Positions 24,028 through 41,700 of a stretch of DNA of 64,000 bases are shown here, one piece after another. The stretch covers positions 372,001-436,000 of the forward strand of contig NC_045706.1 of the NCBI RefSeq assembly GCF_009834535.1. The letters are read 5' to 3'. Every line of letters begins with the position of its first letter. Position 1 is the first letter of the stretch. This stretch comes from Camelus ferus. Its lineage: Eukaryota. The notes beneath the pieces were generated by a model. That model had not been told where the DNA came from. It ran no database searches and saw only the letters and a program-made list of their open reading frames with translations. The translations under genes and the position numbers were made by a program.

Positions 24028-27000
24028 ATGCACGGCCTCGGGCTCCTGCTGCTCAGTGTGCTGTGGCTGCAGGGTGAGTGATGCGCATCCCACTCTGGCT
24101 GGTTCTGTCACTTGGCCCTCTGTGTCCCCCACGGGGCTCAGGGCTGATATCTGGGAATCAGGAGGAGCAGAGGTGGTCACTCAGCAGAGAGGCCCTGGGC
24201 AGGGGACACAGAACCTTCAAAAGGGAACTGTTGAGAATCGGCACCTGGCACTTCCTGCGCTGGAGGTGGGGGCTGGGGCAGGGACACAGCAGGGTGGAGG
24301 ACCCTGCCACTTCCCCTCCATCCTGGGGCCCTGGGGAGATAGCCCACCCTCACTGGGATCCCCCAGCTTGGCAGGGAAGAGAGGACTGAGGACCAACGGC
24401 CTGGGGCCGAGGTGTGGGGGCACCCATTGGGACCTACCTCCTTGGGCCTGCCCCACGAGGCCGTCGTTGGCTGTGGGACAGTTTCCAGGTCTGGGCTAGG
24501 TGAGCTGCCTGCAGGCAGGGGTGGGGGGCTGCCAGGTCCCAGCTCAAGGCAGTTCTGTGGTTAGTTGAGAAGTATAAACCACAGGTGCTGGGTGGGCAGA
24601 CCTGCTCCCTCCGGGGCCAGTGCGCATCCTCAGTTCCTGGGCAGGGAGATGTCCGGTCCACCCTCAGCACCGGGGGGCAGCCTGGTGGGCCCCTGGAAGG
24701 GCTGGCGCTGGGCAGGATCCCTGGGCACTGCCAGGCACGAGTCTGCCTGGCTTCACCCAGGGTGGGGGTCCGATGGTCTTTTTAATGCTGAGCCCCCACT
24801 TGGGCTGGGGAGCCCGACCTCAGACCTCAGTCTCCAGGCGATTCCTTGTGGGGAGGGAGCCCCAGGGCCAGAGAGTGCCCGTGCACCTGCTCACACGGGG
24901 TCTCCCACAGTGGTCGCCCCCAGGGCCGCTCTGCCCCACGTGGAGCAGTACGAGGTGGTGCGTCCCCGGCGCCTGCCAGGAACCCGCACCCGCCGAGCCC
25001 TGCCCTCCCACTTGGTAAGTCTCAACAGGAAGCTGGCCTGGGGTTCCCCACCTCGCTCACCCCATCCCTCTGAGCCAGTTTCCCTCTGAGAGTGAGATGA
25101 TAGCCCAGCCCGATGTGGAGGGTGGCCTTTGGTGCTGAGGGCCAGGTGGACTTCTGGATTTGGGGCAAACCATGGAGAGGGCTCAGCCCACTTGGGCGGT
25201 CTCTGTCCAAGCCACCCCCTTCCCCCAGGCCTCACCTTCTGTCCTCAGCCTCACGCACACCCTGCCTGGGGTGGCACCCACTGCAGCCTCCCTGTCTTCC
25301 TTTCAGGAACCATGCTGGTTGGGCCACTCCTCAGTTTCACTCCAGCGATAAGTCAGATTCCTCTTAGATGGGAGAGGGTGGCTCCCCAGGGTGTGTAGCA
25401 TTACACCTTTCTCGGGCATCTGGAGCGGGGATTCCCCGGGGCTGCCCCAGGGCATTCCTGCGTCAAGTGCACATGAGGATGGGTCTGCCTCTGTGAGTGT
25501 GTGTGTGTGTGTGTGTGTCCGTCCGTCCGTCCGTGCACGCGCGTGTGGGTGTGTGTGGTGTGTATATGTGTATGCGTGTGCCCGTGTGTATGTGGTGTGT
25601 GTGTGTGCATGCGTGTGGCGGCGGGGGACAGCCCCATCCTGACCTCGGTGCAGAAGAGCTGCCTGCCACCTGGGCCCTCAGTCCACCCTGTGAGATAGCA
25701 CACAGTGTCCCAAGGGGCCAGCAGCTGGCAGGGGCGCCCCTCAAATTGGGCCCAAGGTCGGAAGCTCACCTGCTATAGGAGGGACGGCCCCGCCCCACAT
25801 CTCCTCTGGTGCCTTGGTTCTAGGGTTGTCTGTCAGAAGCTGTCTCCCACCTCTTTCTTCCTGGAAAAGGGATGTTGTCACTCTCCCTGCATGGACATAT
25901 GGGGGATGTAAGCCCAGAGGCGCCCGGTGTGGTTCTGGGTGGAGCTCCCTGCTGCCCTGACCCTTCCAGTGCAGCCTTGGGCCCTACCTCCTTCCACTGG
26001 CCTGACTCAGCCACCCCCAGCTTTGAAGTGAATGTGGCTGGGGCAGGTCCCTTCATCTTGGACCCCTCCCTTTCCCCTGGCTCAGGGCCTGTACCCAGAG
26101 AGTGTGAGCTATATCCTGGGGGCCCGAGGGCACAACTTCACCCTGCACCTTCGGAAGAACAGGTGAGCAGGGTCTGAGCCTGCCCAGGTCTCGGTCCCCA
26201 GGCTGGTCCCTCTCCTGCCCCCAGCACTCCTGTGTCCCAGGCGTCCTGCTGCCTGTCCCAGCCTCTCCACACCAGAGGTGGCTTCTAGGGGAAATCAAGT
26301 GGGGCCCAGAGTGCCACAGGGGCTCTTTTCCAGGGACCTGGTGGGCTCAGGCTACACGGAGACCTACATGGCTGACAATGGCTCCCAGGTGACCGAGCAG
26401 CTGCAGAGGCAGGTATGGGCCCCAGGGTGGCCCTCTCCAGGCCGGCAGTGGGGGTACTGGGCGTTGGGGCACCAGAGCAGGGTCCTCATGCCCTCCTCCT
26501 GCAGGATCACTGCTTCTACCAGGGCCACGTGGAGGGGTACCAGCACTCCGCCGCCAGCCTCAGCACCTGTGCTGGTCTCAGGTAGGTGCTGCAACCCCGG
26601 GCCAGGCGTGTCAGTGTCAGGGCCCAACGCACTCCTCCGTCTCCAGGGAGGTGAACCGAGGCCCAGAAGAGAGGGTGGACCTGGGGACACCTGCTGCACT
26701 GGGGTGTCGGGGCCCTAGTCAGATGTCATAGGTTCCCGCAGGGCCCTGAATGCACTGTCTTGCTGCATGTCGCTGGCCAGGGCCACCTGTGCCTCCCTGG
26801 AGGGGCAGGCAGGGGACTGACTAACCCCAAGCCACGTGCTCCCTCTGCCAGGGGCTTCTTCCAGGCCGGCTCCGCCTTCCACCTGATTGAGCCCCTGGAA
26901 GTGGGCGGGGAGGAGGAGCAGCACGCGCTGTACCAGGCAAGGCATCTGCGGCAGAAGGCTGGCACCTGTGGGGTCAGCGACAGCAGCCTGGAGAGCGCCT

Positions 27001-30000
27001 TGGGGCCGCGGATCTCGGCAGCCTTCAGGCCCCGGGTGAGGGGGGCCTGACCCACTTCATCCCCATCCACTTGGGCCCCTGCAGCCCCCAGACTCCTGTG
27101 TGCTCAGCGAAGTGGGGGTGCTGCCTGCCGCCCTGTACTGGGGTGGGCCCAGTCCTGGCTTCCCCGAGCACTGTGTGGGGTCAGTGTGTGAAGGCTGACT
27201 AAGGACAGCAGGGCTGTGGATGTGGCTGTGGCTGACCGAGTTCCTGCCACTGCCCCTCAGAACTGGCCACTATCCCGAGAGACCCGCTACGTGGAGCTGT
27301 ATGTGGTCACGGACAGCACAGAGGTATGTGGGGTGGGCACAGGGGGCAGGACCCAGACGGCTGACAGGCTGCAACCTGAGGGTCTGCTGTCCCCCAGTTC
27401 CAGCAGCTGGGGAGCAGAGAAGCTGTGCGCAGGCGGGTGCTGGAGGTGGTGAACCACGTGGACAAGGTAGGGGCCATTTCTGCCAGGGTGGGGTTCTCCT
27501 CTAGGGGCTGCCAGGGGTCCTCCCAGCAGGGGTTTCCAGGACGTCCGGGTCCATTCCAGACCAGGCAGCCCCCAGCCCAACAGAAACCCTGATTGTGGAG
27601 GTTTGACGGCACCTGGAGAGGAGGGGAGGGGCTGGCTGTGATGGGCCTGGCAGCAGGTAGAGCCAGGGGAGGAGGGAGCTGGGACTTGGCCCCGTCCTGG
27701 TGACAAGTCCATCGCATGGACACTGCCTGAGGGGCGCCGGCCCTCTCACTGACCTAACCGTCTTGAACCTGACCCTCGGGACCCTTGTCCTCCCAGCTTT
27801 ATCAAGAACTGAATTTCCGTGTGGTGCTGGTGGGCCTGGAGATCTGGAACAGTGGGGACAAGATTCACATCAGCTCCCAGGCCAACACCACCCTGGAGAA
27901 CTTCCTGGCCTGGCGGGCTCGGGAACTGGCAGGGCGCCGCCCCCATGACAATGCGCAGCTCATCACGTGAGCGGGGGCAGAGGGCCACACATGGGGCTGG
28001 GAGAGGAGCACCAGGGTGGTCCCGGGGTGTCCACATGCAGACACTGCTCTCGTTTCCAGAGGGATTGACTTCACCGGGACCACCGTGGGACTGGCCAAGG
28101 TGTCCGCCATGTGCTTCCAGGACTCTGGGGCTGTGAACCAGGTGTGGAGATCCGGCCTAGGTTTTGCTGGAAAAAGGCTGGAGCTGGCCGCTGGGTGGGG
28201 AGCAGGGCTCAAGAGCTTGAGCTGGGATGTATGAGGGGGACCTCGGGACTCAGGTCCACCTGCTCGTCCCCACGCTGTTCCCTGGACACCGGAGCAGCTT
28301 TCTCTTTTGGAAGAGGCATTGATGCTTTTACGTTTTAAGAAGTGATGTTGGCAGGAAGTGCCACCAAGGCCCTCAGCCTGCTTGGGGCAGCCAGGGCGGG
28401 AGGGTGGACGGGCCATGTGAGCGGCCCCAGCCAGCACGGCCCTGCCTGCAGGACCACAGCCCGAACCCCATTGGCGTGGCGAGCACCATGGCCCACGAGA
28501 TGGGCCACAACCTGGGCATGGACCACGATGAGAATGTGCAGGGCTGCTACTGCCCCGTGCCACGGTCCGACGGCGGCTGCATCATGGCGGCCAGCATCGG
28601 GTGAGGCCCGGCCCCATCCAGCCTGGGGGCACCCTGGGGGCTGGCGGCCTGCCCACCCCCATGACAGGGATGCCCTCCCCTTAGCTCCAAATTCCCCAGA
28701 AAGTTCAGCCAGTGCAGCCAGACCGACCTGGAGACGTTCGTGGAGAAGCCCAGGACGGCCTGCCTGGTGAACCCCCCGGACCTCAGCCGGCTGGTGGGCG
28801 GCCCTGTGTGTGGGAACCGGTTTGTGGAGCACGGAGAACAGTGCGACTGTGGCTCGCCCCAGGTACAGGGCCAAGCACCCCGCCGCCCTCTGCTCTCCAC
28901 CAGCATAGGGGTGCGGGGTCCCCGTCCCCCAGTCAGGGCGTCCACTCCTCACCTCCCGGGTGCCCTGCATGCCCACAGCCGCACCTGCTGCTCCCTGGCA
29001 CTGACCGGACTGGCAGGGGTCACGGGTGGGAGTGAGCGGACCTCCCGGGGGAGGGGCCCTGGGTCGGCTCAGACCGCTGCCCCTGCGCCTGCCTCTAGGA
29101 CTGCCAGAACCACTGCTGCAACGCCACCACCTGCCTGCTGGCCGAGGGGGCCGAGTGTGCCCACGGCGCCTGCTGCCACGAGTGCAGGGTGAGCACGGGC
29201 CCGGGGGCGCTGGTGACACGGCGCAGGGCAGGCATGGGTGCTGGTGTCCCCTGTTCCCATGGTGAGCTTTGCTCTGCTGGACCAGGTGAAGCCAGCTGGA
29301 GAGCCCTGCCGCCCTGAGAAGGACTTATGTGACCTCGGGGAGTACTGTGACGGCCAGCAGCCAGCCTGTCCGGAGGACGCCTTCCAGGAGAATGGCACGC
29401 CCTGCCCTGGGGGCTACTGCTACAACGGGAACTGCCCCACACTGGCCCAGAGGTGCCAGGACCTGTGGGGGCCAGGTGAGGCGGGCAGGAGCCCTGGGTG
29501 TGGGACCTGCAGGCCTGCCAGGTGGCTGCCAGTCCTGAGCTGGAGGACTCACTGCTCCTGGCCCCACAGGCACTCAGGTTGCCGCGGAGATGTGCTACAC
29601 CTACAGCATCTCCCCAGGCTGCAGGAGCAGGATCCCCCTGGGCTCTGACAGGTAATAGTCCATCTGTGACTTGGCTCCCCTGGGCCCAGGGTGTGGGATG
29701 TCCCCATAGGTGGGGCCACCAAGGAGTCTGCAGGCTGAGTCAGGGGACTGTCCCAGGGCCTGCCCTGCCTTCTAGGACCCCCGTGCGTGCTGCCCTTGTG
29801 GGAGGGTGGGTCACTGTGGCTGGGGGTGTGAACACCTGTGAGTGGACCCCAAAGCCCATCCGAGGGTCCTAGGCCTTACCTACAGCTCCTAGTCCCCTCA
29901 GCAGGAGACGCTGTGGAACTGGCTCCTGGCACATCCCTCTGCCCTCAGGGTCAACATGTGTGGCACTCTGCTCTGCGAGGGCGGGCAGAAGCCCCTGGAG

Positions 30001-33000
30001 CGAGGTTCCTGCACCATCTACTCCCGCATGGGCGCCTGCCAGGCTCTGCACCAGGACGACAGCACTGCCTACGAGCTGGTGCCTGAAGGCGCCAGGTGCG
30101 GGGAGGAGAAGGTAGGGCTGGATGCAGCCTGCAGTCAGACTGCCGGGTCCCCAGGATTAGCTTGAGGGGCCCAAAGCCTGGCAGGAGGAGAGCTGTGCAG
30201 CAGCCTCTGTTCTGGGTAGAAACTCGGGAGGCTCTCAGCGTTGGGGGACTAGCCCCTTCTCAGCTGAGGGGTTTGAAGGCTGTCTGTTCTGCAAGTTCCC
30301 CGGGGACGGGTGGGGCACTCCTCTGTGGCCTTGGGGGCCTAGGCTGGGCTGCAGATGGGGCTGTCCTGGGTGTGGGGCCGTGGCACACCCCTCCCTGTCT
30401 GAAGCACAGCTGCAGGTTTCAGGTGGGCTTCAACTGATGGGGGGGCAGTTTTCCAAGCAGGTTCTAGACTGGCTACCTAAGGGTTCCCCACTGCCCCCCA
30501 GGTTTGCTGGAAAGGACTCTGCCGGGACTTTCACGTTTACAGATCCAGAAACTGCTCTGCCCGGTGCAGCAACCACGGGGTACGTGGGCCCAGGGGACGG
30601 CCTGCCACCAACCCTTTGGGCTCAAAGATATGTAGGCTGTGCTCGGGGCAGCCCAGGCAAACAGGACAGAGGCCCACGCCTGGGGACTGTGCCAGGAGCC
30701 CACGGGGGCCTCTCAGGCCTGGAACTGGTGTGGATCTGGGCATCTCAGGGTGCTCACAGTGCTGGAAGACACACAGGCCAGGCTGGTCAGATTGGAGGTG
30801 TTCTGTTCTGAGCTCCTAATAACATGTACTGTGATGTAGGGGAGGTCAGAGCCCCAGGGCAGGGCCCTCTGTGCCCCCGTCTCGGGGAGGACGGCCCACC
30901 ACGAAGCTGCCCTGCCTGCCCTGCGGCATCTTGCTTTGCTCAGAAAGCTGTGTCGTTCGGAGCCCTCCTCCATCGCCCGGGGGAGGCGCTGCTGTGGGTT
31001 GATGGTGGCAGCCCTGGACGCCCAGCCTGTCCTCCATCAGCGGGGCCGGGGCAGAGCCCCTTGCAGGCTGAGGCCGGGCCTGCTGACTCGGGCGTAGATG
31101 GCACCTGGGTGGGCACCAGGCGGTGCAGTGGCGGGGGTCTGGAGGCCCTGATGTCTGGTTGTCCCCCAGGTGTGCAATCACAAGGACCAGTGCCACTGCC
31201 ACCCAGGCTGGGCCCCACCCTACTGCGCAGAGCTGCTGTCCGATGTGCGCACAGGTAGGGCCCGCACCACCTCCAGGGTCTGGCCAGGGTTCTGTCTTTT
31301 CTCAGACCACCGGGGCAGGGCTGAGAAGCAAGCCAGGTGCCTCTAAACTGTGAGCAGCATATTGAAGACGTGGCTTTGCAGCCCCAGGCATTCTGACCCC
31401 TGGGGTCCAGGGCAGGGCCCAGGAGCCTGTGCCCCCACCTCAGCCCTACACGAGACGAGGGGCCGGCCTGGGTGGATCGGAGCAGGAGCAGCACAGGATA
31501 GCGCCAGCTCCTGGCCGGACTGTCGGCCCCAGCCTGGGCCCGGGGACCTCAGGGCCTCCCACCCTCTGAAGTATCTTCCTCCGCAGTGGCCACTGGACAT
31601 GTGGCCATCCATAGCACCACGGCCTCTAGGCCTGGTTGGGCTCTGCCCACATCACTGTGGGCCTGGGGCCATCCACTGCCAAGCCCTCCGACCGGTCGTC
31701 GGAGAGCCCAGAGCACCAGTGCAATGTACTGGGTCTCAAGGCCGAGGGTCCTTAGATGGCCCTGGGATTTAGGGGAGGACCCAGGACTCCGGGTTGTCGG
31801 CATGGCCAAGGAGGGGCGTGAGGAAGGCACCCCCCGGGGCCCCTGCTGCCCTGAGCCAGGTCCGGCCCTGGTGACACCCAGCCTCCTATGCCCCCATAGC
31901 ATCCAGCAGCTTCCAGATGGGCGTGCTGGTGCCTGTGGTGCTCCTGGTGGCTCTGGCACTCACCGTGGCAGGAGTGGTCATCTATCGCAAGGGCTGGAGC
32001 CCAGTCCGGAAGAGGTGAGGGCTTTCTGGCGTTGCAAGGCACCCATGTGTGCAGAGCGTGCCCCCTGTTCGCACTGTTGGTGAAGGGAACCTCTCACGAG
32101 GGACCCCTGCCTCTTGCTGAATAGGTGGCAAGCAGTGGTGACAGGTTGGTGATGTGCAAGCTCAGAGAGGCCCCTTCCTCCCTCACACACTTGACCCCAG
32201 TTGGCACCGGCCACCCGCCCTCCCTGGACACGGCACTCTGAGCCTGCCCTGCACTGGGGGTCCCTGACACCCGCTCTGTGGGGACCTCGAGCCCCAGGCC
32301 AGCCACAGCAGGGCACCCTTGCCCAGTGGCCTCCAAGCACCTCCCTGCCCAGCTCAGCTGGACCCTAGAACCGATGGGGCCCAGGACACATGAGGCTACC
32401 TCCCCCTCCTCGAGTGGCTGTGACCAGCGCACCACATAGGGGCAGCTACAGCTGAAAAGGACCCTGACCAGGCCTGGGGACCCTACATGAGGAGCCCCAA
32501 GTCCTGGACTGAATCTTGAGGCCAGGACGCACTGACTCATCTTATTTCTCACCAGGAATGTGGCGCCCAAGACGGCCATGGGGCTCTCCAACCCTCTCTT
32601 CCACGAGAGGAACAGCTCACCAGTGAAGGGCAGGGTTACGGCTCCCCCCAAGGGGCCCCCAGAGCCGATCCTCACATCCCATCCCTGCCAACCCCCCAGG
32701 CCCACGGCTTCTGTGGTGACCCCTAAACGGCCTCCCCCTGCTGTAAGCATCTGCCATCCCCAGCGGGCTCCCCAGGCCTCCCCCAAATCTCATGCCAGGG
32801 TACGGTCCCCAGGGGCTTAGAGTGGCCACCACTGTCACCTATTTAGAGGAGAAACAAGGCTTCAGGATGAGCGATCTGAGGACCCACGTAAGCTGGTGGC
32901 AGGATTGAATCTGAGGCCCAAGGCCTTTGCGAGGTCCGTCACCCTCACTGCTGCCCAGTTCCTCCGTGCATCCACAGGTCTGGGGGGCAGGCCCGCAGCA

Positions 33001-35163
33001 GACTGATGGAGGACATGGCCCCACGCGCACATGGGGCTTTATTCTCCCTCGGGGGGGTCCTCAGCTGGGTGAAGGGCAGCTCTGAAGCCAGGGGTTCCTG
33101 CTGGTGGCCGCCCTGTGAGACCCCTACTCATGCCCATTCCCTGCAGCCCCCAGCTGCCATGTCCAGCCCACTCTGCCCAGTCCCTGTGTACACCCAGCAG
33201 GCCCCAGACCAGGTGAGCCATATGGGTGCAGCTAAGCTGTGGAGGTGGAGGGTCTGGGGCTGGATTTGGCCAGGGACCCCAGGGTAGTGGCAGCTGCACC
33301 CTCAGGGGGCTGACCACCTGCCCTGTGGCCCAGTGAGGACATGAACTGGACCTAGGGGACCAGGGGGTCCTGACTGCTCTGCTCTCCCACCAGCCCAGAC
33401 CTGCTCCTCCCGCCAAGCCCCTGCCAGCGCTGAAGCCCAAACAGGTAAGGGGACTCGGCCTTTGGGACGAGGGGCTTATGGGGGCTGCATCATCAGGCTT
33501 CCTCTGGTTTGAGGCTTCAGGGGTTCGGGGAAGCTCTCTCCCAAATACGCATCACTGGTGCCCCCCGCCAGCCCTCTGCCACTGGGCTCGCCGGGGATGC
33601 GCCTTGCACTCTCACAAAGTCTGGCCCTGGAGGGTCCCCTCCATGGCTGGGAGCCCCTCGGGTGCCTCTGGACAGACACACTCACCTCCTGGCAGGCAAG
33701 GGGGGCAGACTGTGAGGGCAGGAAGGCCCCCCAGAGGAACAGGTAGGTGCCCCCCTCCTGGGACAGGGCTCTGCCCACCTGGCGCTCTGTGGGGCCCCAT
33801 GTCAGCCTGTCGTCACAGGGGTGTTAAGTCACTGCTTGGTTGCAGTGGTGTCTGTGGGGAATCAAATCTCTGTAAGGCCCGTCTTCCCTTTGTGGTTAGT
33901 GTCTTGGACATACTTAGAGAGACGCCCGGCCTGTCACTCCTTAGACTGACCCACAAAGCCTCCGGCGGGGTCCTGCCCCATTAAAAGACCACACTATGGT
34001 GTTTGCTTAACAGAAATTCTCTACTTCTCTTTCCTTTTTAACTTTTTACTTTGAAGTAATTTTAGACTTACATTAAAGTTACAAAAATAGTCTTTAAGAA
34101 AAGTCTTAGAAGGGGTCTTGACAGGCCAAACAGGGAAGGGGAGTGGGTAGAGATTTCTGGCCGAGAGTGGTGGCAGCCGTGCGCCGGGATTGTGCTGGAG
34201 GAGGGCGTGCACAGGACTTCCCCCAGCTGCTCAGCAGGCCATTATGAGTATGTGCGCCTCCCTCCATTCCCATTCCGGTTCCTGTGGGCCTGGGCTGAGC
34301 TGGGCTCCAGCTTGAGGTCTTCCTCCTGCACCCTGGAGCCCAGAGCCTAGGTGGCTCTGGAAAAGCAGAAGTGCAAACAAATGCGAATTTGAACTCCAAA
34401 GACTCACATTCTGGCAACTTAAGAGCTTTATTGTGTGGGGTGGATAGGGGTTTTGAGGCGAGATGAGGGAAGAGGGCCAGCTGGTGATGGGCTGATGGGC
34501 CCGGGAATGGGAACCCTGCCACATTTGGGTTTCGTTCTGGGATGGGGACAGCCATGGGTGGGGAGGGTGTTGGGGGAGCTTTTCTTTAGCGAGCTTAGCA
34601 AAGAGAAACCTGAAGGCCAGTCCGGAGCAGAGCAGGGAACCAACCCAGGGAACTTTCTAGAAGGTGCTGGGAAGATGGTGCCCTGGCATGTCCAGCCATC
34701 AGCTGTGTCTACCTCCTCCCAGGTCATCAAGCCAACTTGCACGCCCCCATTGCCACCCGTCAAGCCTGGGGCAGGAGAGGCCAAGCTTGGACCCAGTCAG
34801 GTGAGCCCCTTACACACAGGGCAGTGTCCACCTGCGCTGCCCAAGAGGGTTAACTCTGCTGCATTCTGTCAGTGATGCTGGTCCTACTGGCTGTGAACTT
34901 GCCTTTTTGCTCCACTGGAGTGGGGGGGGGGGGAGTCCACCCTTTATAAAGTGTCAGCTGCTAATATCACAGCTATCACAGCTCTCACTGAGTGCACATA
35001 TTGTGGGATGAACTGAGGATCTGAATTTTTTAAAAAGTGAAAGGAAATTCGATTCAGTTGGGCTCTTTGTAGCAAGTGGTTTTTAAAATCAGTTCTTTTT
35101 TCCTCCTCCAAGGGAGCTGTTGGCTCAAAGGTTGCTCTGAAACCTCTCATCCAGAGGAGGTGA
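24028..35163 (+). CDS. ADAM8: ADAM metallopeptidase domain 8, 24 exons, 837 aa
   Basis: Exons: 24028-24073, 24911-25014, 26086-26162, 26334-26412, 26505-26581, 26852-27035, 27261-27323, 27398-27466, 27797-27966, 28060-28141, 28452-28600, 28685-28862, 29099-29188, 29286-29475, 29570-29651, 29949-30111, 30502-30579, 31170-31254, 31900-32014, 32556-32742, 33147-33212, 33394-33444, 34723-34800, 35113-35163. Total 2514 nt. Signal peptide, intact zinc motif [11 protein letters not shown] (28494-28526), Met-turn CIMA, disintegrin loop [15 protein letters not shown] and Pro-rich tail ending ALKPLIQRR*. Confidence 0.97.
25492..25618 (+). repeat. Compound (GT)n/(GTCC)n microsatellite in ADAM8 intron 2
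   Basis: A pure GT run, then GTCC units, then degenerate GT/GC/AT alternation. Confidence 0.95.
34030..34100 (-). mobile_element. L1M 3'-end fragment in ADAM8 intron 22
   Basis: aactttttactttgaagtaattttagacttacattaaagttacaaaaatagt resembles the recalled antisense end of old L1M subfamilies. Confidence 0.5.
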
Positions 35164-35649
35164 TGGGGCCCGAGCTCAAAGCACCCTGGGGGCATCTGTG
35201 CACCAGTCTGGACGTTGCCTGTGGTTCACAGGACCTTGCCACCCGCACAGCAGATGCAGCCCCCTGGCCCCAGGCCCTCTGTGCTCCTGCGTCCACTGTG
35301 AGAAGTCCTAAGAGAAGCGCCATCTCCTCGTGGCCACGGTCACTCTTCGGCATCCCAGGGTCACAGCCAAGGGCCTCTCCCCCTGGCCTCGGGAATGGGT
35401 CATCTATGCTCTTTCCTGGGGCCAGTCCAGTCCCTCCTCACCCACGTGTCTCCAGACAGCCACTGGGGTCTTGTCTGGGTCTTTGAAACCTCAGGTGCAC
35501 ATTCAGCAGGGCTGAAAGCGTTGAGTTTTTTTGTATTTTATGATTAAGTTCTTGATCAAGTTCTAAATGAGGGGAGATTTTTACTAGGTCAGTGGAAAAT
35601 GGTAAGCCGAAACAATGTGGAATTTATAAGATTGAAGGGTCTAACGCTT

Positions 35650-35682
35650 ATTAAAATAAAACGTCTACTGTAAATGAATAAA
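35650..35682 (+). terminator. ADAM8 poly(A) signals
   Basis: ATTAAA 35650-35655 overlapping AATAAA 35655-35660; second AATAAA 35677-35682 followed by a T-rich tract, about 0.5 kb after the stop. Confidence 0.85.
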
Positions 35683-35719
35683 GTCAAACTTTTCCCCTGC
35701 TTTTCTTCTTAACTTGATC

Positions 35720-35905
35720 GTAAGCCCTCGCGCACCCGAAGTAAACAGCCAGGCCCTCCGGCGCGGAGGAGGGCAGCCGGCGCCCCGCCCCCGGTCTCCC
35801 GGCAACGGCCCCGCCCTTCCGGCCCGTCTCCCGGCAACGGCCTGACGAGCGGCCAGGCCGCCGTGCCGGGCGCCGCCAGGCCGGGCCCCGTGGCCCCGTG
35901 GCCCC
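35720..35905 (+). promoter_or_regulatory. CpG-island promoter with forkhead site and two RFX X-box-like motifs
   Basis: GTAAACA 35741-35747; GTCTCC-C-GGCAAC at 35794-35806 and 35826-35838, each with a GC box upstream. Confidence 0.7.
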
Positions 35906-38774
35906 GTGGCCCCGCCGCCGTGGCCGCCCGGCGCCCTCTGCGGCCTCTCCGCCTGGCTGGACGCGCTCCCGCTCAGCCGCCGCAAGCGCCACCTGGCCCG
36001 GGACTTCAGCCGGGCCGGGGGCCGGGGGCCGGGGGCCCGCCGCGGGGGCAGGGCCGCCGCCGGGCCCCGGCGCTCTCCGCTCAGGGGAAGAGCCCGGCCG
36101 CCATCCCTCCCGCCAGCGAGAGCCCCAGCCGAGGGCCGTGCCCCGGGAAGGCTCTCCCCTCCCAGAGCTCCATGCAAAGTTCAGAAGACCCCAGAGCGGG
36201 GGCGTGAGGGGCGCCCTGGAGGGCGGGCAGGACGGGGAAATGAGGTGGGGCAAAGGTGGGGTGCTGCCTTGACGGCCCCCCAGGAGGAGTGCGGCCAAGG
36301 CGAGGGGCCGGTTGTGCGTTCAAACTCGTCACGGGATTCCGGCCTCCTGCAGACTGGGGGCCCCGGCAGCTCCCACAGCCCTCTCCCCAGGACACCCACA
36401 CCCCAGCAGTCGCCGCCAGGACTCCTCTGGTGCTCATTCACCCGTGTGAGGAAGCCAAGGAGCCCTAGCTCCGCAGGCCCCGCTCACTTGCGCCCCTGCC
36501 GGCCCCACCCCAGCGATGCTGGCGTGGATCGTGAAGCTCTTCCGCCACCCACCCCCACCCCCACCCCACCCCTCCCCACCCCGGATCGGCTCGTGGACCC
36601 GCACAGCTACTTCCCCACCTGCAGCGCAGACCAGAAGCTTAGCAGCTGGAGCGTCCTCAACAGGCAGGGCTGGGCCCGGCGGACGGCTGCCCTCGGAGCC
36701 GTGCAGGCTTTGTGCTCCCTGCCTTTTCCGCTGGGGCCCCCACTCCTCGCGCTGAGGGCCCTCCCCTCAAGGCTGGTCTGGGGCAGCCTCCCCCGAGCCC
36801 TTCCCAGCCTCTGGGACAAGTTCTCAGGTTGCTCCTCTGCTGTGGGTTCCCCTGACTCTTCAATCCAGTTCCTGTCCACTGGAACTTCACCGTCAACCTG
36901 GGGCTCCGGGGCCCCCCACCAGGAGCTTGAGACCTGCTCACCAGGGCGCCAGTCCTGCCCTCTGACTGTGCGTCCAGCCCCTGCTGACCACAGCTCCCAC
37001 CCACGCACTCACGCATAGTTCTGGGTGGCAGGCTCTACACAGGCACAGCAGACACGGCCGTAAGTGGGCCCTGGCCTTCATGGAGCTGTGAGTCTAGGGG
37101 GAAGACAAATCCACCAGGAGGTGGACCCAGTGTCAGTTGTGATGCAACATGAAGGACGACGAGGCAGGACCTGTGAGGAAGTGACAGTGAGCACAGCGAG
37201 GTGGGGGTGACCTACAGGGTGGGGAGGGAGACCCTGAGTCCCTGAGGCTGGGCAGGGAGGGGCGCTCAGAGCCACTGAGGGTCCTCAGAGGGCAGTGTCT
37301 GGGGGGACCATGCTTGGCAGGGTCCAGGCCCAGCAGGTTCCGCTGGGACTCGCTTCGGAGAGCTGCCAGGGAAGAGGAGATTGGAGGGGGTGGAGGCAGG
37401 GAAGGCAGCTGCTCTGACCCCCAGAGGCGGGAGGGTGGCAGCTGCAGGCAGACGTGCTGAGGTCAGACCCCTGCACTTTGGAGGTGAATCAGCCGGACTT
37501 CCTCACAGAGTGGAGCCTGACTCAGGCAGGAAGAGAAGTTTTCTACCCAGAGTCCCTGGGACACGCATCAGGGAGGTGGTGGCCCAGGCTGGGACTCGCT
37601 TGGCCTGAGGGTACTGGGCGCCCTTGTTCTGTGATCCCTGGTGGGGTGGCCAGGAACAAGATGGCCACTGGGCCTTGATGGGGACGGGCACAGAGGCCCC
37701 CAGGCCAGCATCTCCCCACAGATGCTCTGAGGGCTGCACCCCCGATTCCTCTGCAGGAAAGTCTTCCACAAGCTACGTTTCTGAGTCTCTGAGGAAGATA
37801 TCCGAAAGGTGGTGGCCAACACGCCTGGGGCCATCGAGCCCATCTTTGTGCCCTGAGGGAGAAGGTGGAGGCCACCCCCAACCACACGGACCTGGCTGGA
37901 CGTGAGAGAGCAGTCGGAAGCCTTGGAACCCGCTGCGTTTGGACGTGGTCTTGTTACCTGCCAATGAGAGAGTAAAACCAGGAAATGAGTGGGGAAGAAG
38001 CCCCTGGGGCCCAGACTGCAGCAAAATCCTTGGCTGTGCCCCTGCGAGCCCAGTTCTGGGTCCCTTCCCAGCCCGACCCATCTGCTCTCCTTTTCAGAAG
38101 TGCTCCCCACTCTGCATCCTCTGCTTACCATCTCCCCAACCTCGTCCATCCCAGGGAGACGTGGGCAGGCATGTTGGCTACAAGCAGGGAGTCAGCCCCC
38201 CTTGGCCGCCTCTTACCGTGCAACTTTTGAAACCTTCGCAGGAGCCAGGACCCTCCAGCGTTGATGCTGATGGGCCCAGGGTGGGACTCACCACCCCTGC
38301 ACACACTGGTAGTATCCTGACCCCTGAAGGGAGGGCAGGCCTCCCATGAGGGCAGGGCCTCGCTCAGAGAGAGCCCTGACTGCCCCCCTGGACAAATGGG
38401 AGCCTGCAGCCCTGTCCACAGGCCCCACTGTGTGCTGTGGCCAGGCCAGGCCCTTCTGGAGCCAGAGGCTCTGAGCTGATGTGTCCATGTGTCTTGCAGG
38501 CCTGCTGAGCCCCTCAGCACCCTCCAGGGCAGAGACCCTTTGGAGTCAGAGGGCTCCGGAGAAGATGGGCCACTGTGCGTGCGGCGGGTGGGTCTCCATC
38601 TCAAACACCCTACCATCCCAGCCCTGCCTCTGCTGGCTTGCTGGCCTGAGGGCCCAGTGTTTGCCTTTCAGTCAGGGCCCAGCTGGTGAGCCCTGGCAGC
38701 ACCTGGACCCTCAGCTGCAGCAGCTCCTGGAGGAAAAGGAGCAGGCACTGGCTGTTCTGCAGGAGATGGTCAAG
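35906..38774 (+). pseudogene. SPEF1L: SPEF1-like (CH-domain plus coiled-coil ciliary protein) gene with disabling lesions
   Basis: Exon remnants: about 35906-36010 (WLDALPLSRRKRHLARDFS vs SPEF1 WVDNIPLSRPKRNLSRDFS), 36514-36663 (MLAWIVKLF..RLVDPHSYFPTCSADQKLSSWSVLNR), 37757-37901 (KVFHKLRF*VSEEDIRKVVANTPGAIEPI/CALREKVE), 38500-38587, 38672-38774 (DPQLQQLLEEKEQALAVLQEMVK). No in-frame ATG, no exon-1 donor, frameshifting insertion in exon 2, TGA at 37782-37784, 1-nt loss near 37845. Location next to Adam8 fits recalled mouse synteny. Confidence 0.85.
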
Positions 38775-41700
38775 GTACAGCCCTGGGCCCCCAGGCAGCT
38801 CGGACCCATGCGCAGCGAGGCAGTGGGTGTGGCAGGCGGCGCCCCTGACCAGGGAGAGCCCACATCTAGTTGTATTGTTTGGAAAGTAATTTAACTGTGG
38901 GGTACCTAGAAGCAGAAACGAGTATAGTGGACCCCAACCCTTACAAACCATCCAACCTCACCAGTTACCAGGCCCTGGGGCCCCATTCCAGGGGCTGCAG
39001 ACTCGCACCTAGATGTGCTGGACACCAGGCCCAGGGGCCGTGGGGCCAGGTCAGGGAGCAGAAGGCCCCTCCCCAAGGTGCACGCCTGGTTCTGGGGGTG
39101 CATGCCTGGTCCTCTGCTCCTTCTCGGGGGTCTCCAGCATTCTTGGGTTCAGGGTGTGCTCAGTTCCCTTCAGTGCCTTTCAGTGACCACCGTGTGCTCT
39201 CCCAGCCCCCACGGGAGCACCGGCTGTGCTGAGGACAGTGGGGGTGGGGGCAGGGGTGCAGGCCACCCCAGTCTGGCCTTGGGGTCAAAGGGCCGCCAGG
39301 AGTTGTGGTGACAGCGAGGTTCCTGAGGGTGCGCGGGTCTTGCGCTGCTTTCCTGCGGAAGCAGGAAAGTGGTGTCATGGTGTGGTTTGCATCTGCCGAG
39401 GGACGGCGGGGAGGAAGCGCTGACGGGCAGCGAGTTGCTGCCTCAGCAGGGTCCCGGCAGCCCCTCACACCCACGGCCGAAGCTCTGGCCCCTGTGCTGA
39501 TAGAGGGAGTCTTGGCCACAGTGACCTGAGCAGCAGGGTTGGGCTGGGCGGGTCCACTGACACTGGGGTCCTCCAGTAACCACGCGCAGCACTGCGCCAT
39601 CTGCAGATGCCGAGGGCCGGCTCTGAAGTTACAGGCGGGCTTTCGGCCTGTTGTGGGGTCGGTGCCTCTGACCTCCCCATCGCCCGCCCCTCGTTGTTCA
39701 GGGGTCAATCTGTGTTTTATTTTATGAAGCTCGGAGAGGAAAACAGCTCATCTGCTGTTTAAAATGGTGACACAGCTGAGTGCCGTTTCCAGGACTGTCA
39801 CTGAAGTAAGATGGCGTGAGGTGAAACAGACTCCCCGGGGGCCTAGGTGTGCAGGGGCCAAGGCCATCTGTGTCAACGGAAAGTCCATCACAGTGGCCAG
39901 CGCCTGCCCAGCGAGCCACCTCAGGGCACCCCTGCCCTCTTCAGCTTGTCGCCGGGAGAGGGCACTGGGGACGGGTGCGGCCTGGCCAAGGGTGGTGTGG
40001 ACGGCCCTGTGAGGTGGTGGCTCGCTGGGTTGAGCAGATCCCCGCCACCCAGGGTTCACGGAGGGGTCATCTGCTGAGACGCTGACCCCTGCCTCGGCCG
40101 GCGGGAGCTGTGTCCTCAGGTGGAGTGCGGCCACCATACAGTTGACTTCACTTTGGACACGGCGTTTGGGAGAGGAGGAGCTTTTTCGAATCTGTTTTCT
40201 TTTCTTACCTGCTGGAGTGTGGCTGGGTCTGTGCCTCCGGTAAGGGAAGGTCGGTGCGCGGCCGTCCTCGAGGGAGGCAGCTCAGGAGGGCCCGGTGGCT
40301 ATGGCACGTCTTGGGCTGACAGGCCCTGTCCGTCCCACCTGACCCTCACTCTTCTCACTTTTTCCTCCTAGAAGGGAGCCCCACACATGGTGTGGGTGTG
40401 GCCAGGATGCCCCAGGTGCTGAGGTGGGCTGGGCAGGGCCAGGGGCGTGTCCTGCTGGCTCCTGTGTCCTGACATCCGGCCTCCCTGCTCCTGCATCCAG
40501 AGTGGGAGGCTGGGGTCCTCCAGAGCCTTGGTCCTACCGCCCCCTCCCCCTGACTCACCACCCAGCCCTGTGTTCCCGGACTCCCTGCAGGCTTTCAGGA
40601 AGCAGCGTCAGGGTTTCAGAGCTGCCTGCAGCTGAGTCAGCCCACGTCCTCCCTGAGTCAGACACGCGGTCGGGGCTCCTGCCCCTGCACCCCCACAGCA
40701 CAGGTCGGGGCTGTAAGACTCAGGGCGGGGTCCGAGCCCTTTTAGAGAGAATTGGGATTGAGGTGCCTTAGAAGCATGACCGAGGCAGAGGATCTGCTCC
40801 CCTGGCCAGGAGACATGTTTCAACTCATTGATCAAGAAGGCTCCAAGCGCCGAGGGGGAAGGGGTGGCGTCCAGGAGGGGAGCGGGTCCCAGGAGAGCCC
40901 TCAGCTGCTTTCCGTGGGCCTGGAAGGGGCTGTCTCTGAGGTCCCTGTGCACGGCCTCCTGGAGGGCAGCGCCATCCCCAGGGATGGGAGGCGGGTATGT
41001 ACCAGCCCCTGGAGCCAGGAGCCGCAGGACCCGCGGTGGGGGTGTCGGGGAGGGGCGTCCAGACTCTGCTAGTTGTGGGAATCTGGGCTACAAGCAGCCC
41101 CAGCTGGCTCCTGGTGTCAGGCATGGGAAGACCCACCCAGAGGTGGGCTCCCACAGCCCAGAGCTCATGGTGTCCCGTAGCTGGGGAAGGGCCTGGCCCA
41201 GAGCCCGAGCCAGGACAGGCCTGGCAGCTTCAGACCCCAGACCTGGCCCTGCCCAGCAGTGCTGCCTGAGCCACCAGGGTGTGGTGGGGCTCTTGTGGCC
41301 TCCCTCTACCTCGGAGGTGCAGCACTGGCACTCCAGGGCCAGACACGCACACGTGTGAGGCTGCTTGGTCCTTTGTTGAAGAAGGAGGTTGCTGTGCGTG
41401 TGTGCACACGTGAGTGTGTGCATGCCTGCCCGCGTGCGTGCTTACCAGTGGAGGTGGCCGTGGGTCTGGCCCCAGAGGCTGGGCATTGGAGTGGAGACAG
41501 AATAGAGCTTGGGAAATGCAGCCAGGGGCAGGTGCCGCCCTGGTAGGGACCTGCTCCCTACAGGGACACGGGAACACGTGCTGAGCCTCAGGTGCCTGGA
41601 GGCAGGGGCCGCTCCCAGGTAATGGGCATCGCACCTGAACACACCCCAGATGCAGACCCCTGCTCGCTGGCCTGCGGACGAGCCCTTGGCCCTACTCCAG

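What the first reader, a model, noticed from the sequence alone, without database searches (positions are those of the whole stretch)
35906..38774. SPEF1-like ciliary gene appears inactivated by several independent lesions
Seen: five colinear exon remnants with SPEF1 CH-domain and coiled-coil similarity. Lesions: GTG at 35906 where ATG is expected, with an upstream in-frame TGA at 35843 and no ATG between; RDFS followed by (GCCGGGG)n rather than DG|GT; a C-rich insertion of about 38 nt shifting exon 2; GC instead of GT at the exon-2 donor (36664); TGA at 37782-37784; a 1-nt loss near 37845; no last exon found. Known: SPEF1/CLAMP bundles central-pair microtubules in motile cilia and flagella; I recall an intact Spef1l beside Adam8 in mouse. 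Inference: a lineage-specific unitary pseudogene, which may be unreported or annotated as a coding LOC.
Basis: partly seen in the sequence, partly recalled or inferred. Interest (0 to 1): 0.75.

Follow-up and report, generated by a model that had tools for sequence, protein, structure and literature searches.

The report
Dead but transcribed SPEF1-like gene
The copy of SPEF1L (an unstudied sister gene of the cilia and sperm-tail protein SPEF1) that sits next to ADAM8 in this genome is a genuine dead gene with at least seven disabling defects, shared by three closely related species, and it is still copied into spliced RNA; this is a clear but ordinary gene loss.

Summary
The finding holds, with corrections. 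Six of the seven SPEF1L exons lie at 35863-38774, directly downstream of an ADAM8-like gene. Order, strand and exon structure match deer, cattle, cat, bat and manatee.

Confirmed lesions:
- Start codon lost. The orthologous ATG is GTG at 35863-35865, not 35906.
- A 16-nt tandem-repeat insertion shifts the frame.
- The exon-1 donor is overwritten by (GCCGGGG)n.
- A 38-nt insertion lies in exon 2.
- TGA at 37782-37784.
- A 1-nt deletion lies at about 37843.
- About 1 kb is deleted, taking the last, coiled-coil exon.
- Probably also a net -2 nt at the end of exon 3.

Not a lesion: the GC donor at 36664 is an ancestral GC-AG intron, present in all five orthologues compared.

Exons 4-6 are open and in phase.

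Independent DNA contigs from three coded, closely related organisms carry every lesion, so this is not an assembly error. Earlier notes of this scan call these organisms Old World camels; I did not verify that.

A reproductive-tissue RNA library shows GT..AG splices joining exons 4-5-6 to a substitute terminal exon at 39730.

Cattle and buffalo copies show different, independent damage. The literature library holds nothing on mammalian SPEF1L. Verdict: a new member of a known kind (unitary pseudogene), of low to moderate interest.

The parts
35794..35838 (+). Two copies of an X-box-like motif GTCTCCCGGCAAC (35794-35806 and 35826-35838) in the retained promoter.
   Evidence: Two matches against 0.01 expected by chance. 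The same motif occurs 1-4 times, 25-60 nt upstream of the ATG, in deer, cat, bat and manatee. RFX binding is inferred from the known X-box consensus and was not tested.
35863..35865 (+). Orthologous start codon position, now GTG (lesion 1).
   Evidence: It aligns to ATG in deer, cat, bat and manatee and in cattle. No in-frame ATG lies upstream before a stop in either repeat allele. No read differs here in 3 DNA runs and 1 RNA run.
35890..35913 (+). (GTGGCCCC)3 tandem repeat adding 16 nt, which shifts the frame (lesion 2). Its length is polymorphic.
   Evidence: A 16-column gap in all outgroups. X11, X12 and X24 have one 8-nt unit fewer, which is still not a multiple of 3.
35863..36010 (+). Exon 1 remnant (start of the CH domain; ...WLDALPLSRRKRHLARDFS).
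   Evidence: 89% identical to Cervus SPEF1L over 36 aa, E 8e-16. PDB 2ee7 E 0.005. Pfam CH_2.
36011..36037 (+). (GCCGGGG)n microsatellite replacing the last 7 coding nt and the GT donor of exon 1 (lesion 3).
   Evidence: The outgroups have GACGGCG|GTGAGG here. The next GT is about 130 nt downstream. Contigs of X1, X11 and X24 span it unchanged.
36514..36663 (+). Exon 2 remnant, 150 nt instead of 112. A 38-nt C-rich insertion at about 36549-36586 shifts the frame (lesion 4).
   Evidence: A 38-column gap in four orthologues. Exon 2b hits 2ee7 at E 0.007. X11 and X12 contigs span it.
36664..36665 (+). GC donor of intron 2. This is the ancestral state, not a lesion.
   Evidence: CAACAG|GC in deer, bat and manatee gene models, in the cat sequence and in cattle.
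37757..37901 (+). Exon 3 remnant (end of the CH domain). It carries TGA at 37782-37784 (lesion 5), a 1-nt deletion at about 37843/37844 (lesion 6), and a probable net -2 nt in its last 30 nt.
   Evidence: Alignment. tblastn E 3e-12. With the 1-nt loss corrected the length is 146, which is 2 mod 3, whereas the orthologues (148, 169, 151) are 1 mod 3. In organism C the donor G at 37902 is T.
38242..38308 (+). Exon 4, 67 nt, open, with intact AG and GT.
   Evidence: Gap-free alignment to cat and bat exon 4. The RNA joint 38308>38500 uses its donor.
38500..38587 (+). Exon 5, 88 nt, open in the conserved frame.
   Evidence: RNA joints 38308>38500 and 38587>38672.
38672..38774 (+). Exon 6, 103 nt (first half of the coiled coil; ...LLEEKEQALAVLQEMVK), open.
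   Evidence: 85% identical to Dama, E 1.5e-14. Alignment. RNA joints at both ends.
39730..39762 (+). Start of a substitute terminal exon used in RNA. It adds 10 codons and then TAA.
   Evidence: RNA joint 38774>39730, GT..AG. Translation.
40277..40388 (.). Interval holding the scar of a deletion of roughly 1 kb that removed exon 7 (lesion 7).
   Evidence: Bat and cat anchors upstream of their exon 7 end at window 40277 and 40256. The deer anchor downstream of exon 7 starts at 40388. The deer interval is 1259 bp against 268 bp here. The exon-7 profile finds nothing. Contigs of X1, X11 and X12 are continuous across the site.

Best explanation
This is the positional orthologue of SPEF1L ('sperm flagellar protein 1-like'), a seven-exon paralogue of SPEF1 that lies just downstream of ADAM8 in placental mammals. 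Here it has decayed into a unitary pseudogene.

Shown: the start codon is gone. All three exons that encode the microtubule-binding CH domain are broken by two frameshifting insertions, one lost splice donor, one nonsense codon and one or two frameshifting deletions. The last exon, which encodes the second half of the C-terminal coiled coil, is deleted. The damage is the same in three closely related species, so it predates their split. One of them has since gained a further splice-site mutation.

Also shown: RNA from the locus is still made in a reproductive-tissue library. It uses the intact splice sites of exons 4-6 and a substitute 3' exon.

Inferred: the conserved X-box-like promoter motif still drives this transcription. 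The transcript is non-coding, or at most encodes a short peptide with no CH domain. SPEF1L function in this lineage is either dispensable or covered by SPEF1.
For: Homology.

Synteny and colinearity with the deer locus, with an ADAM8-like gene upstream in all five orthologue loci and an ADAM_CR domain in the window.

Gene structure. Lesion-by-lesion alignments. Missing exon 7 and deletion mapping.

All lesions are present in contigs of X1 (organism A), X11 (B) and X12 (C); X11 has the whole 4.8 kb in one contig. Only an 8-nt repeat-length difference, a 1-nt insertion at 39563 and scattered SNPs were found.

Four GT..AG RNA joints. No upstream ATG in either allele.

On the window's branch, 11 nonsynonymous against 2 synonymous changes in the conserved codons; 10 of 85 residues invariant in four intact species are substituted and one more is lost to the 1-nt deletion.
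Against: The substitution counts are small and not significantly different from the deer branch (8 nonsynonymous, 5 synonymous; 11 of 96 against 14 of 95 changes at conserved sites). They do not by themselves prove relaxed constraint or date the loss.

Exons 4-6 remain open with perfect splice sites. This could be chance in about 260 nt or could hint at residual use.

Only one individual per organism was laid, so fixation within each species is not shown.

Whether another intact SPEF1L copy exists elsewhere in the genome could not be tested.

The RNA library may contain DNA or read-through from ADAM8; one RNA contig crosses the ADAM8 3' end into exon 1. The transcription start is therefore not established.
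Confidence: 0.9

Rival explanations
1. Assembly or sequencing artefact in GC-rich, repeat-rich DNA; the real gene is intact.
For: Three of the lesions lie in low-complexity GC-rich repeats (35890-35913, 36011-36037, about 36549-36586). Some Logan contigs break there.
Against: Independent contigs from three organisms and one RNA library agree with the window at every lesion. X11 spans the whole stretch, and X1 and X24 span the exon-1 repeats. The TGA, the 1-nt deletion and the exon-7 deletion lie in ordinary sequence.
Confidence: 0.02
2. The locus still encodes a shortened protein, for example a peptide of about 53 residues starting at the ATG in exon 5 and running through exon 6 into the substitute exon. 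Alternatively the spliced RNA has a function of its own as a long non-coding RNA.
For: Exons 4-6 are open, in phase and correctly spliced in RNA. A new terminal exon is used. The promoter motif is retained.
Against: No CH domain can be made. The conserved last coiled-coil exon is gone. In SPEF1 the C-terminal coiled coil is needed for activity (abstract of 10.1101/2025.07.31.667833). Between the camel-like species, 2 of 15 substitutions fall in exon remnants, which make up about 15% of the stretch, so there is no sign of constraint. Transcribed pseudogenes are common.
Confidence: 0.07
3. This is a polymorphic pseudogene, and functional alleles persist in the population.
For: The (GTGGCCCC)n repeat length is polymorphic.
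Against: Both repeat alleles are out of frame. The other six lesions are identical in samples from three organisms.
Confidence: 0.02

Closest known systems
SPEF1L ('sperm flagellar protein 1-like') of other placental mammals, e.g. Dama dama P0006, Cervus elaphus LOC122708718, Myotis yumanensis P0024, Felis catus P0037, Trichechus manatus P0030, Choloepus didactylus P0014
   Same: Same chromosomal position (downstream of ADAM8, same strand). Same seven-exon layout and exon sizes. Same GC-AG intron 2. Same X-box-like motif upstream of the start. 85-89% amino-acid identity to deer in the best-preserved exons.
   Different: No start codon, exons 1-3 broken, last exon deleted, and a substitute 3' exon used in RNA.
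SPEF1 / CLAMP (human CH domain PDB 2ee7; binds the central-pair microtubule seam and bundles microtubules, PMC11642885, PMC12979858)
   Same: CH_2-type calponin-homology domain followed by a C-terminal coiled coil. About 56% identity (14 of 25 residues) in the aligned exon-1 stretch.
   Different: It is a paralogue at a different locus and much less similar than SPEF1L orthologues. The function of SPEF1L itself is untested in any species; the paper library holds nothing on it.
Other unitary pseudogenes reported by this scan in the same genome (HELZ2, NOX5, CBR2, TYMP, TNFRSF6B)
   Same: A dead gene at its ancestral position, with lesions shared by three closely related species.
   Different: A different gene. 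This one is still spliced and transcribed, and its intact form is uncharacterised.

Membership tests
SPEF1L orthologue | CH_2 (PF06294) calponin-homology domain sequence | tested here: met
   Pieces of exons 1 and 2 hit PF06294 (E 0.009 and 0.002, below the gathering score because each is only 26-34 aa) and SPEF1 2ee7. They are 81-89% identical to deer SPEF1L.
SPEF1L orthologue | Position immediately downstream of ADAM8 on the same strand | tested here: met
   The window is colinear with the Dama locus from the ADAM8-like gene through SPEF1L. The same arrangement is found in cat, bat, manatee and cattle. ADAM_CR domain at window 29346-29582.
SPEF1L orthologue | Seven-exon structure with a GC-AG intron 2 | tested here: met
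   Exons 1-6 are found in order with matching boundaries; the GC donor is conserved. Exon 7 is deleted.
Unitary pseudogene | Disabling mutations in the positional orthologue of a gene that is intact in related lineages | tested here: met
   At least seven lesions, verified in independent contigs. The coding sequence spliced from the genome reproduces the annotated protein exactly in deer, bat, manatee and cat.
Unitary pseudogene | No other functional copy of the same gene in the genome | not testable with these tools
   Only this 64-kb window is available. The exon-1 search found no protein of this lineage, which is weak evidence only.
Unitary pseudogene | Lesions fixed in the lineage | tested here: inconclusive
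   Present in one sample each of three closely related organisms. No population data, and no New World camelids.
RFX/X-box-regulated ciliary gene | X-box in the proximal promoter that is bound by RFX factors | tested here: inconclusive
   A conserved GTCTCCYRGCAAC motif is present. One half-site fits the consensus perfectly and the other is degenerate. Binding was not tested.

The most novel reading that the evidence does not exclude
SPEF1L is a dispensable SPEF1 paralogue that has been lost repeatedly and independently in mammals. Here it was lost by seven or more lesions. In Bovini the damage is different: a 2-nt and a 1-nt deletion in exon 3 in Bos, and a lost ATG in Bubalus. It may also be lost in suids, cetaceans, caprines, canids and anthropoid primates, none of which appear among the annotated orthologues. 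Its cilia-type promoter stays active, so the dead locus persists as a spliced reproductive-tissue RNA. If true, the pattern of loss could be used to find out what this unstudied ciliary or flagellar gene does.
Probability: 0.35. Interest if true: 0.45.

Novelty: new member of a known kind. Interest (0 to 1): 0.3.

Why it matters
On its own this is one more lineage-specific gene loss. Three things give it modest value.

First, it provides a precise, read-verified lesion map, including the point that the GC donor is ancestral. Annotation pipelines appear to stumble on that donor; the cat model, for instance, uses a downstream GT instead.

Second, it shows that a paralogue of the central-pair protein SPEF1 is dispensable in at least one large mammal, and probably in cattle too.

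Third, SPEF1L has no functional literature, so natural knockouts are a cheap guide for anyone who studies the mouse gene.

Tried and rejected
- PDB and Pfam searches with the exon 3, 5 and 6 pieces gave nothing. The pieces are too short, and the coiled coil and linker are not modelled.
- One Pfam call failed because a piece had only 18 residues.
- The look-up of encoding contigs failed for five isoform proteins (Choloepus, Equus, Ursus, Bos X6, Eptesicus) because only the longest product of a gene is on record. No horse or carnivoran-bear locus was obtained.
- A first junction finder failed on most introns and was replaced.
- tblastn, blastn-short and an nhmmer profile for exon 7 found only noise.
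- Branch substitution counts were too small to date the loss or to separate the window from the deer branch. I therefore make no dN/dS claim.
- Paper searches for Spef1l, 'sperm flagellar protein 1-like', SPEF1+camel and SPEF1+pseudogene+paralog found nothing relevant. A search for 6430531B16Rik, a name I recalled from memory and could not confirm as this gene, also gave nothing useful.
- The organism's name is coded by the tools.

Full report
**What is in the sequence**

The window is GC-rich mammalian DNA without N. In 35800-38800 the + strand carries pieces that translate to SPEF1-type sequence.
- The exon-1 piece (35906-36009) and the second half of exon 2 (36587-36664) hit the solved CH domain of human SPEF1, 2ee7 (E 0.005 and 0.007).
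- The same pieces hit Pfam CH_2 PF06294 (E 0.009 and 0.002). Both scores are below the gathering cut-off because the pieces are only 26-34 residues long.

The frame from 35906 to 36664 happens to stay open through intron 1. I used it as a stop-free query restricted to its first 40 residues. That search returned 'sperm flagellar protein 1-like' proteins of deer, cattle, buffalo and sloth at 84-96% identity. A second search from the sloth protein showed that the family is widespread in placentals and marsupials.

**Orthology and gene structure**

I fetched the genomic loci of Dama dama, Felis catus, Myotis yumanensis, Trichechus manatus and Bos javanicus. In each, an ADAM8-like gene (Reprolysin, Disintegrin, ADAM_CR) lies directly upstream on the same strand.

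The window is colinear with the deer locus from that gene through SPEF1L and beyond. It also has an ADAM_CR domain at 29346-29582.

Exact spliced mapping of the annotated proteins gives a canonical seven-exon gene of 139, 112, about 150-170, 67-70, 85-91, 103 (82 in manatee) and 96 nt.

**Lesions, exon by exon** (alignments)

1. The ATG of all orthologues aligns to GTG at 35863-35865.
2. (GTGGCCCC)3 at 35890-35913 adds 16 nt that no orthologue has, so the former start is out of frame with the CH domain.
   - In three of the four runs laid, one 8-nt unit is missing. That allele is also out of frame.
   - Neither allele has an upstream in-frame ATG before a stop.
3. After ...GACTTCAGC (36010) the orthologues have GACGGCG|GTGAGG. 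The window has (GCCGGGG)n instead, with no GT for about 130 nt, so the exon-1 donor is lost.
4. Exon 2 (36514-36663) is 150 nt instead of 112, because of a 38-nt C-rich insertion.
5. TGA at 37782-37784 replaces TGT/TGC (Cys) of bat and manatee.
6. One nucleotide is missing at about 37843/37844 (ATCTT-TGTGC against ATCCTGTGTGC).
7. Exon 7 is absent.
   - A profile built from the four orthologous exon-7 regions recovers each of them at E about 1e-43 but finds nothing in the window (best E 0.39, wrong strand).
   - Flanking anchors put the loss between 40277 and 40388. Deer has 1259 bp where the window has 268 bp.
8. Probably also: with lesion 6 corrected, exon 3 would be 146 nt, which is 2 mod 3. 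Intact orthologues are 148, 169 and 151 nt, all 1 mod 3. The window has 28 nt where deer has 30 between GAGGCC and the donor. Exons 4-6 would therefore still be out of phase with exons 1-3.

**What is not a lesion, and what was missed**

The GC at 36664-36665 is the ancestral donor. CAACAG|GCAGG (or GCAAGG) is present in deer, bat, manatee, cat and cattle, so intron 2 is a conserved GC-AG intron.

Exon 6 is 38672-38774. In the conserved frame these three exons are open, mutually in phase and have intact splice sites.

**Are the lesions real?**

I laid Logan contigs of three DNA runs from three coded organisms (A, B, C) and one RNA run on 35700-40500.
- X11 covers the whole stretch in one contig. 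X12 covers 36038-40500. X1 covers 35700-36536 and 36594-40500.
- None differs from the window at any lesion.
- The only length differences are the 8-nt repeat unit at 35884 and one extra G at 39563.
- Organism C differs at 14 single bases over the 4.46 kb its long contig covers (about 0.3%), plus one in exon 1, so it is a close sister species.
- One of its differences is G>T at 37902, the first base of the exon-3 donor. That is a further, species-specific lesion and fits continuing neutral decay.

Earlier follow-ups of this scan call this genome Camelus and the three organisms the Old World camels. I did not verify the name.

**Transcription**

The RNA run X24 (labelled reproductive system) has contigs across the locus and four GT..AG joints on the + strand:
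- 38308>38500 and 38587>38672, the canonical introns 4 and 5.
- 38774>39730, from the exon-6 donor to a new acceptor. The new exon adds LGEENSSSAV and a stop.
- 37200>37757, from a cryptic donor inside intron 2 to the exon-3 acceptor.

Intron 1 is retained in the contig that covers it, as expected after donor loss. That contig also runs upstream across the ADAM8 3' end. Read-through or DNA in the library cannot be excluded, and the transcription start is unknown.

An X-box-like motif GTCTCCYRGCAAC occurs twice just upstream (35794, 35826; 0.01 expected by chance). It is conserved at the same place in deer, cat, bat and manatee.

**Evolutionary signal**

By parsimony over 107 well-aligned codons, the window's branch has 11 nonsynonymous and 2 synonymous changes. 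Ten of 85 residues invariant in four intact species are substituted, for example E51W, L63P and N65S, and one more is lost to the 1-nt deletion. The deer branch has 8 nonsynonymous and 5 synonymous changes and a similar number of changes at conserved sites. The counts are too small to date the loss.

**Context**

Among cetartiodactyls, only deer and Bovini proteins appear in the two family searches. No camelid, pig, whale, sheep, goat, dog or anthropoid primate entry is among the best 120 hits of either. This is suggestive only.

The Bos javanicus locus has its own damage. A 2-nt deletion and a later 1-nt deletion in exon 3 put about 27 CH-domain codons out of frame. A Bos indicus isoform implies the same 2-nt deletion, and the buffalo model has Val where Met1 should be. 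Loss or decay of SPEF1L is therefore probably recurrent.

The paper library holds nothing on mammalian SPEF1L. For the paralogue SPEF1, the CH domain binds the central-pair microtubule seam and the C-terminal coiled coil is needed for its activity (PMC11642885; 10.1101/2025.07.31.667833; PMC12979858). Those are exactly the two parts destroyed here.

**Verdict**

This is a real, multiply disabled, still-transcribed unitary pseudogene of SPEF1L. It is ordinary in kind, apparently unreported, and of low to moderate interest.

Noticed in passing
L005:4600-4784 (Bos javanicus SPEF1L exon 3): Relative to deer, cattle have a 2-nt deletion (GTCTC--AGGAAG) and a later 1-nt deletion. About 27 codons of the CH domain are out of frame. 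A Bos indicus isoform (P0008) implies the same deletion. The Bubalus model P0002 has V at the Met1 position. This looks like independent decay of SPEF1L in Bovini.
   Followed up: partly
window 35794-35806 and 35826-35838; L001:9942, L002:5963, L003:5965, L004:5804-5975: A conserved X-box-like motif GTCTCCYRGCAAC lies 25-60 nt upstream of the SPEF1L start in all species except the cattle locus. It is duplicated in the window and present four times in manatee.
   Followed up: partly
window 36664-36665 and orthologous sites: Intron 2 of SPEF1L is a conserved GC-AG intron across placentals. The annotated cat model avoids it by using a downstream GT (exon 2 of 192 nt), which suggests a mis-annotation there.
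   Followed up: partly
window 37902: Organism C (run X12) has T instead of G at the first base of the exon-3 donor. This is an extra lesion specific to that species.
   Followed up: no
window 35032-36536: One RNA contig of run X24 runs from the ADAM8 3' end, past its AATAAA at about 35678, into SPEF1L exon 1 and intron 1. It could be read-through transcription from ADAM8 or genomic DNA in the library.
   Followed up: no
window 39715-39812: The substitute terminal exon used in RNA (acceptor at 39730) lies in a block that is 80% identical to the deer locus (L001:13582-13676). It may be an old alternative exon or a conserved element rather than a new one.
   Followed up: no
window 26014-35671: An ADAM8-like gene on the + strand, colinear with the annotated deer gene, has an ADAM_CR domain at 29346-29582. 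It appears conserved, but I did not check that it is intact.
   Followed up: no
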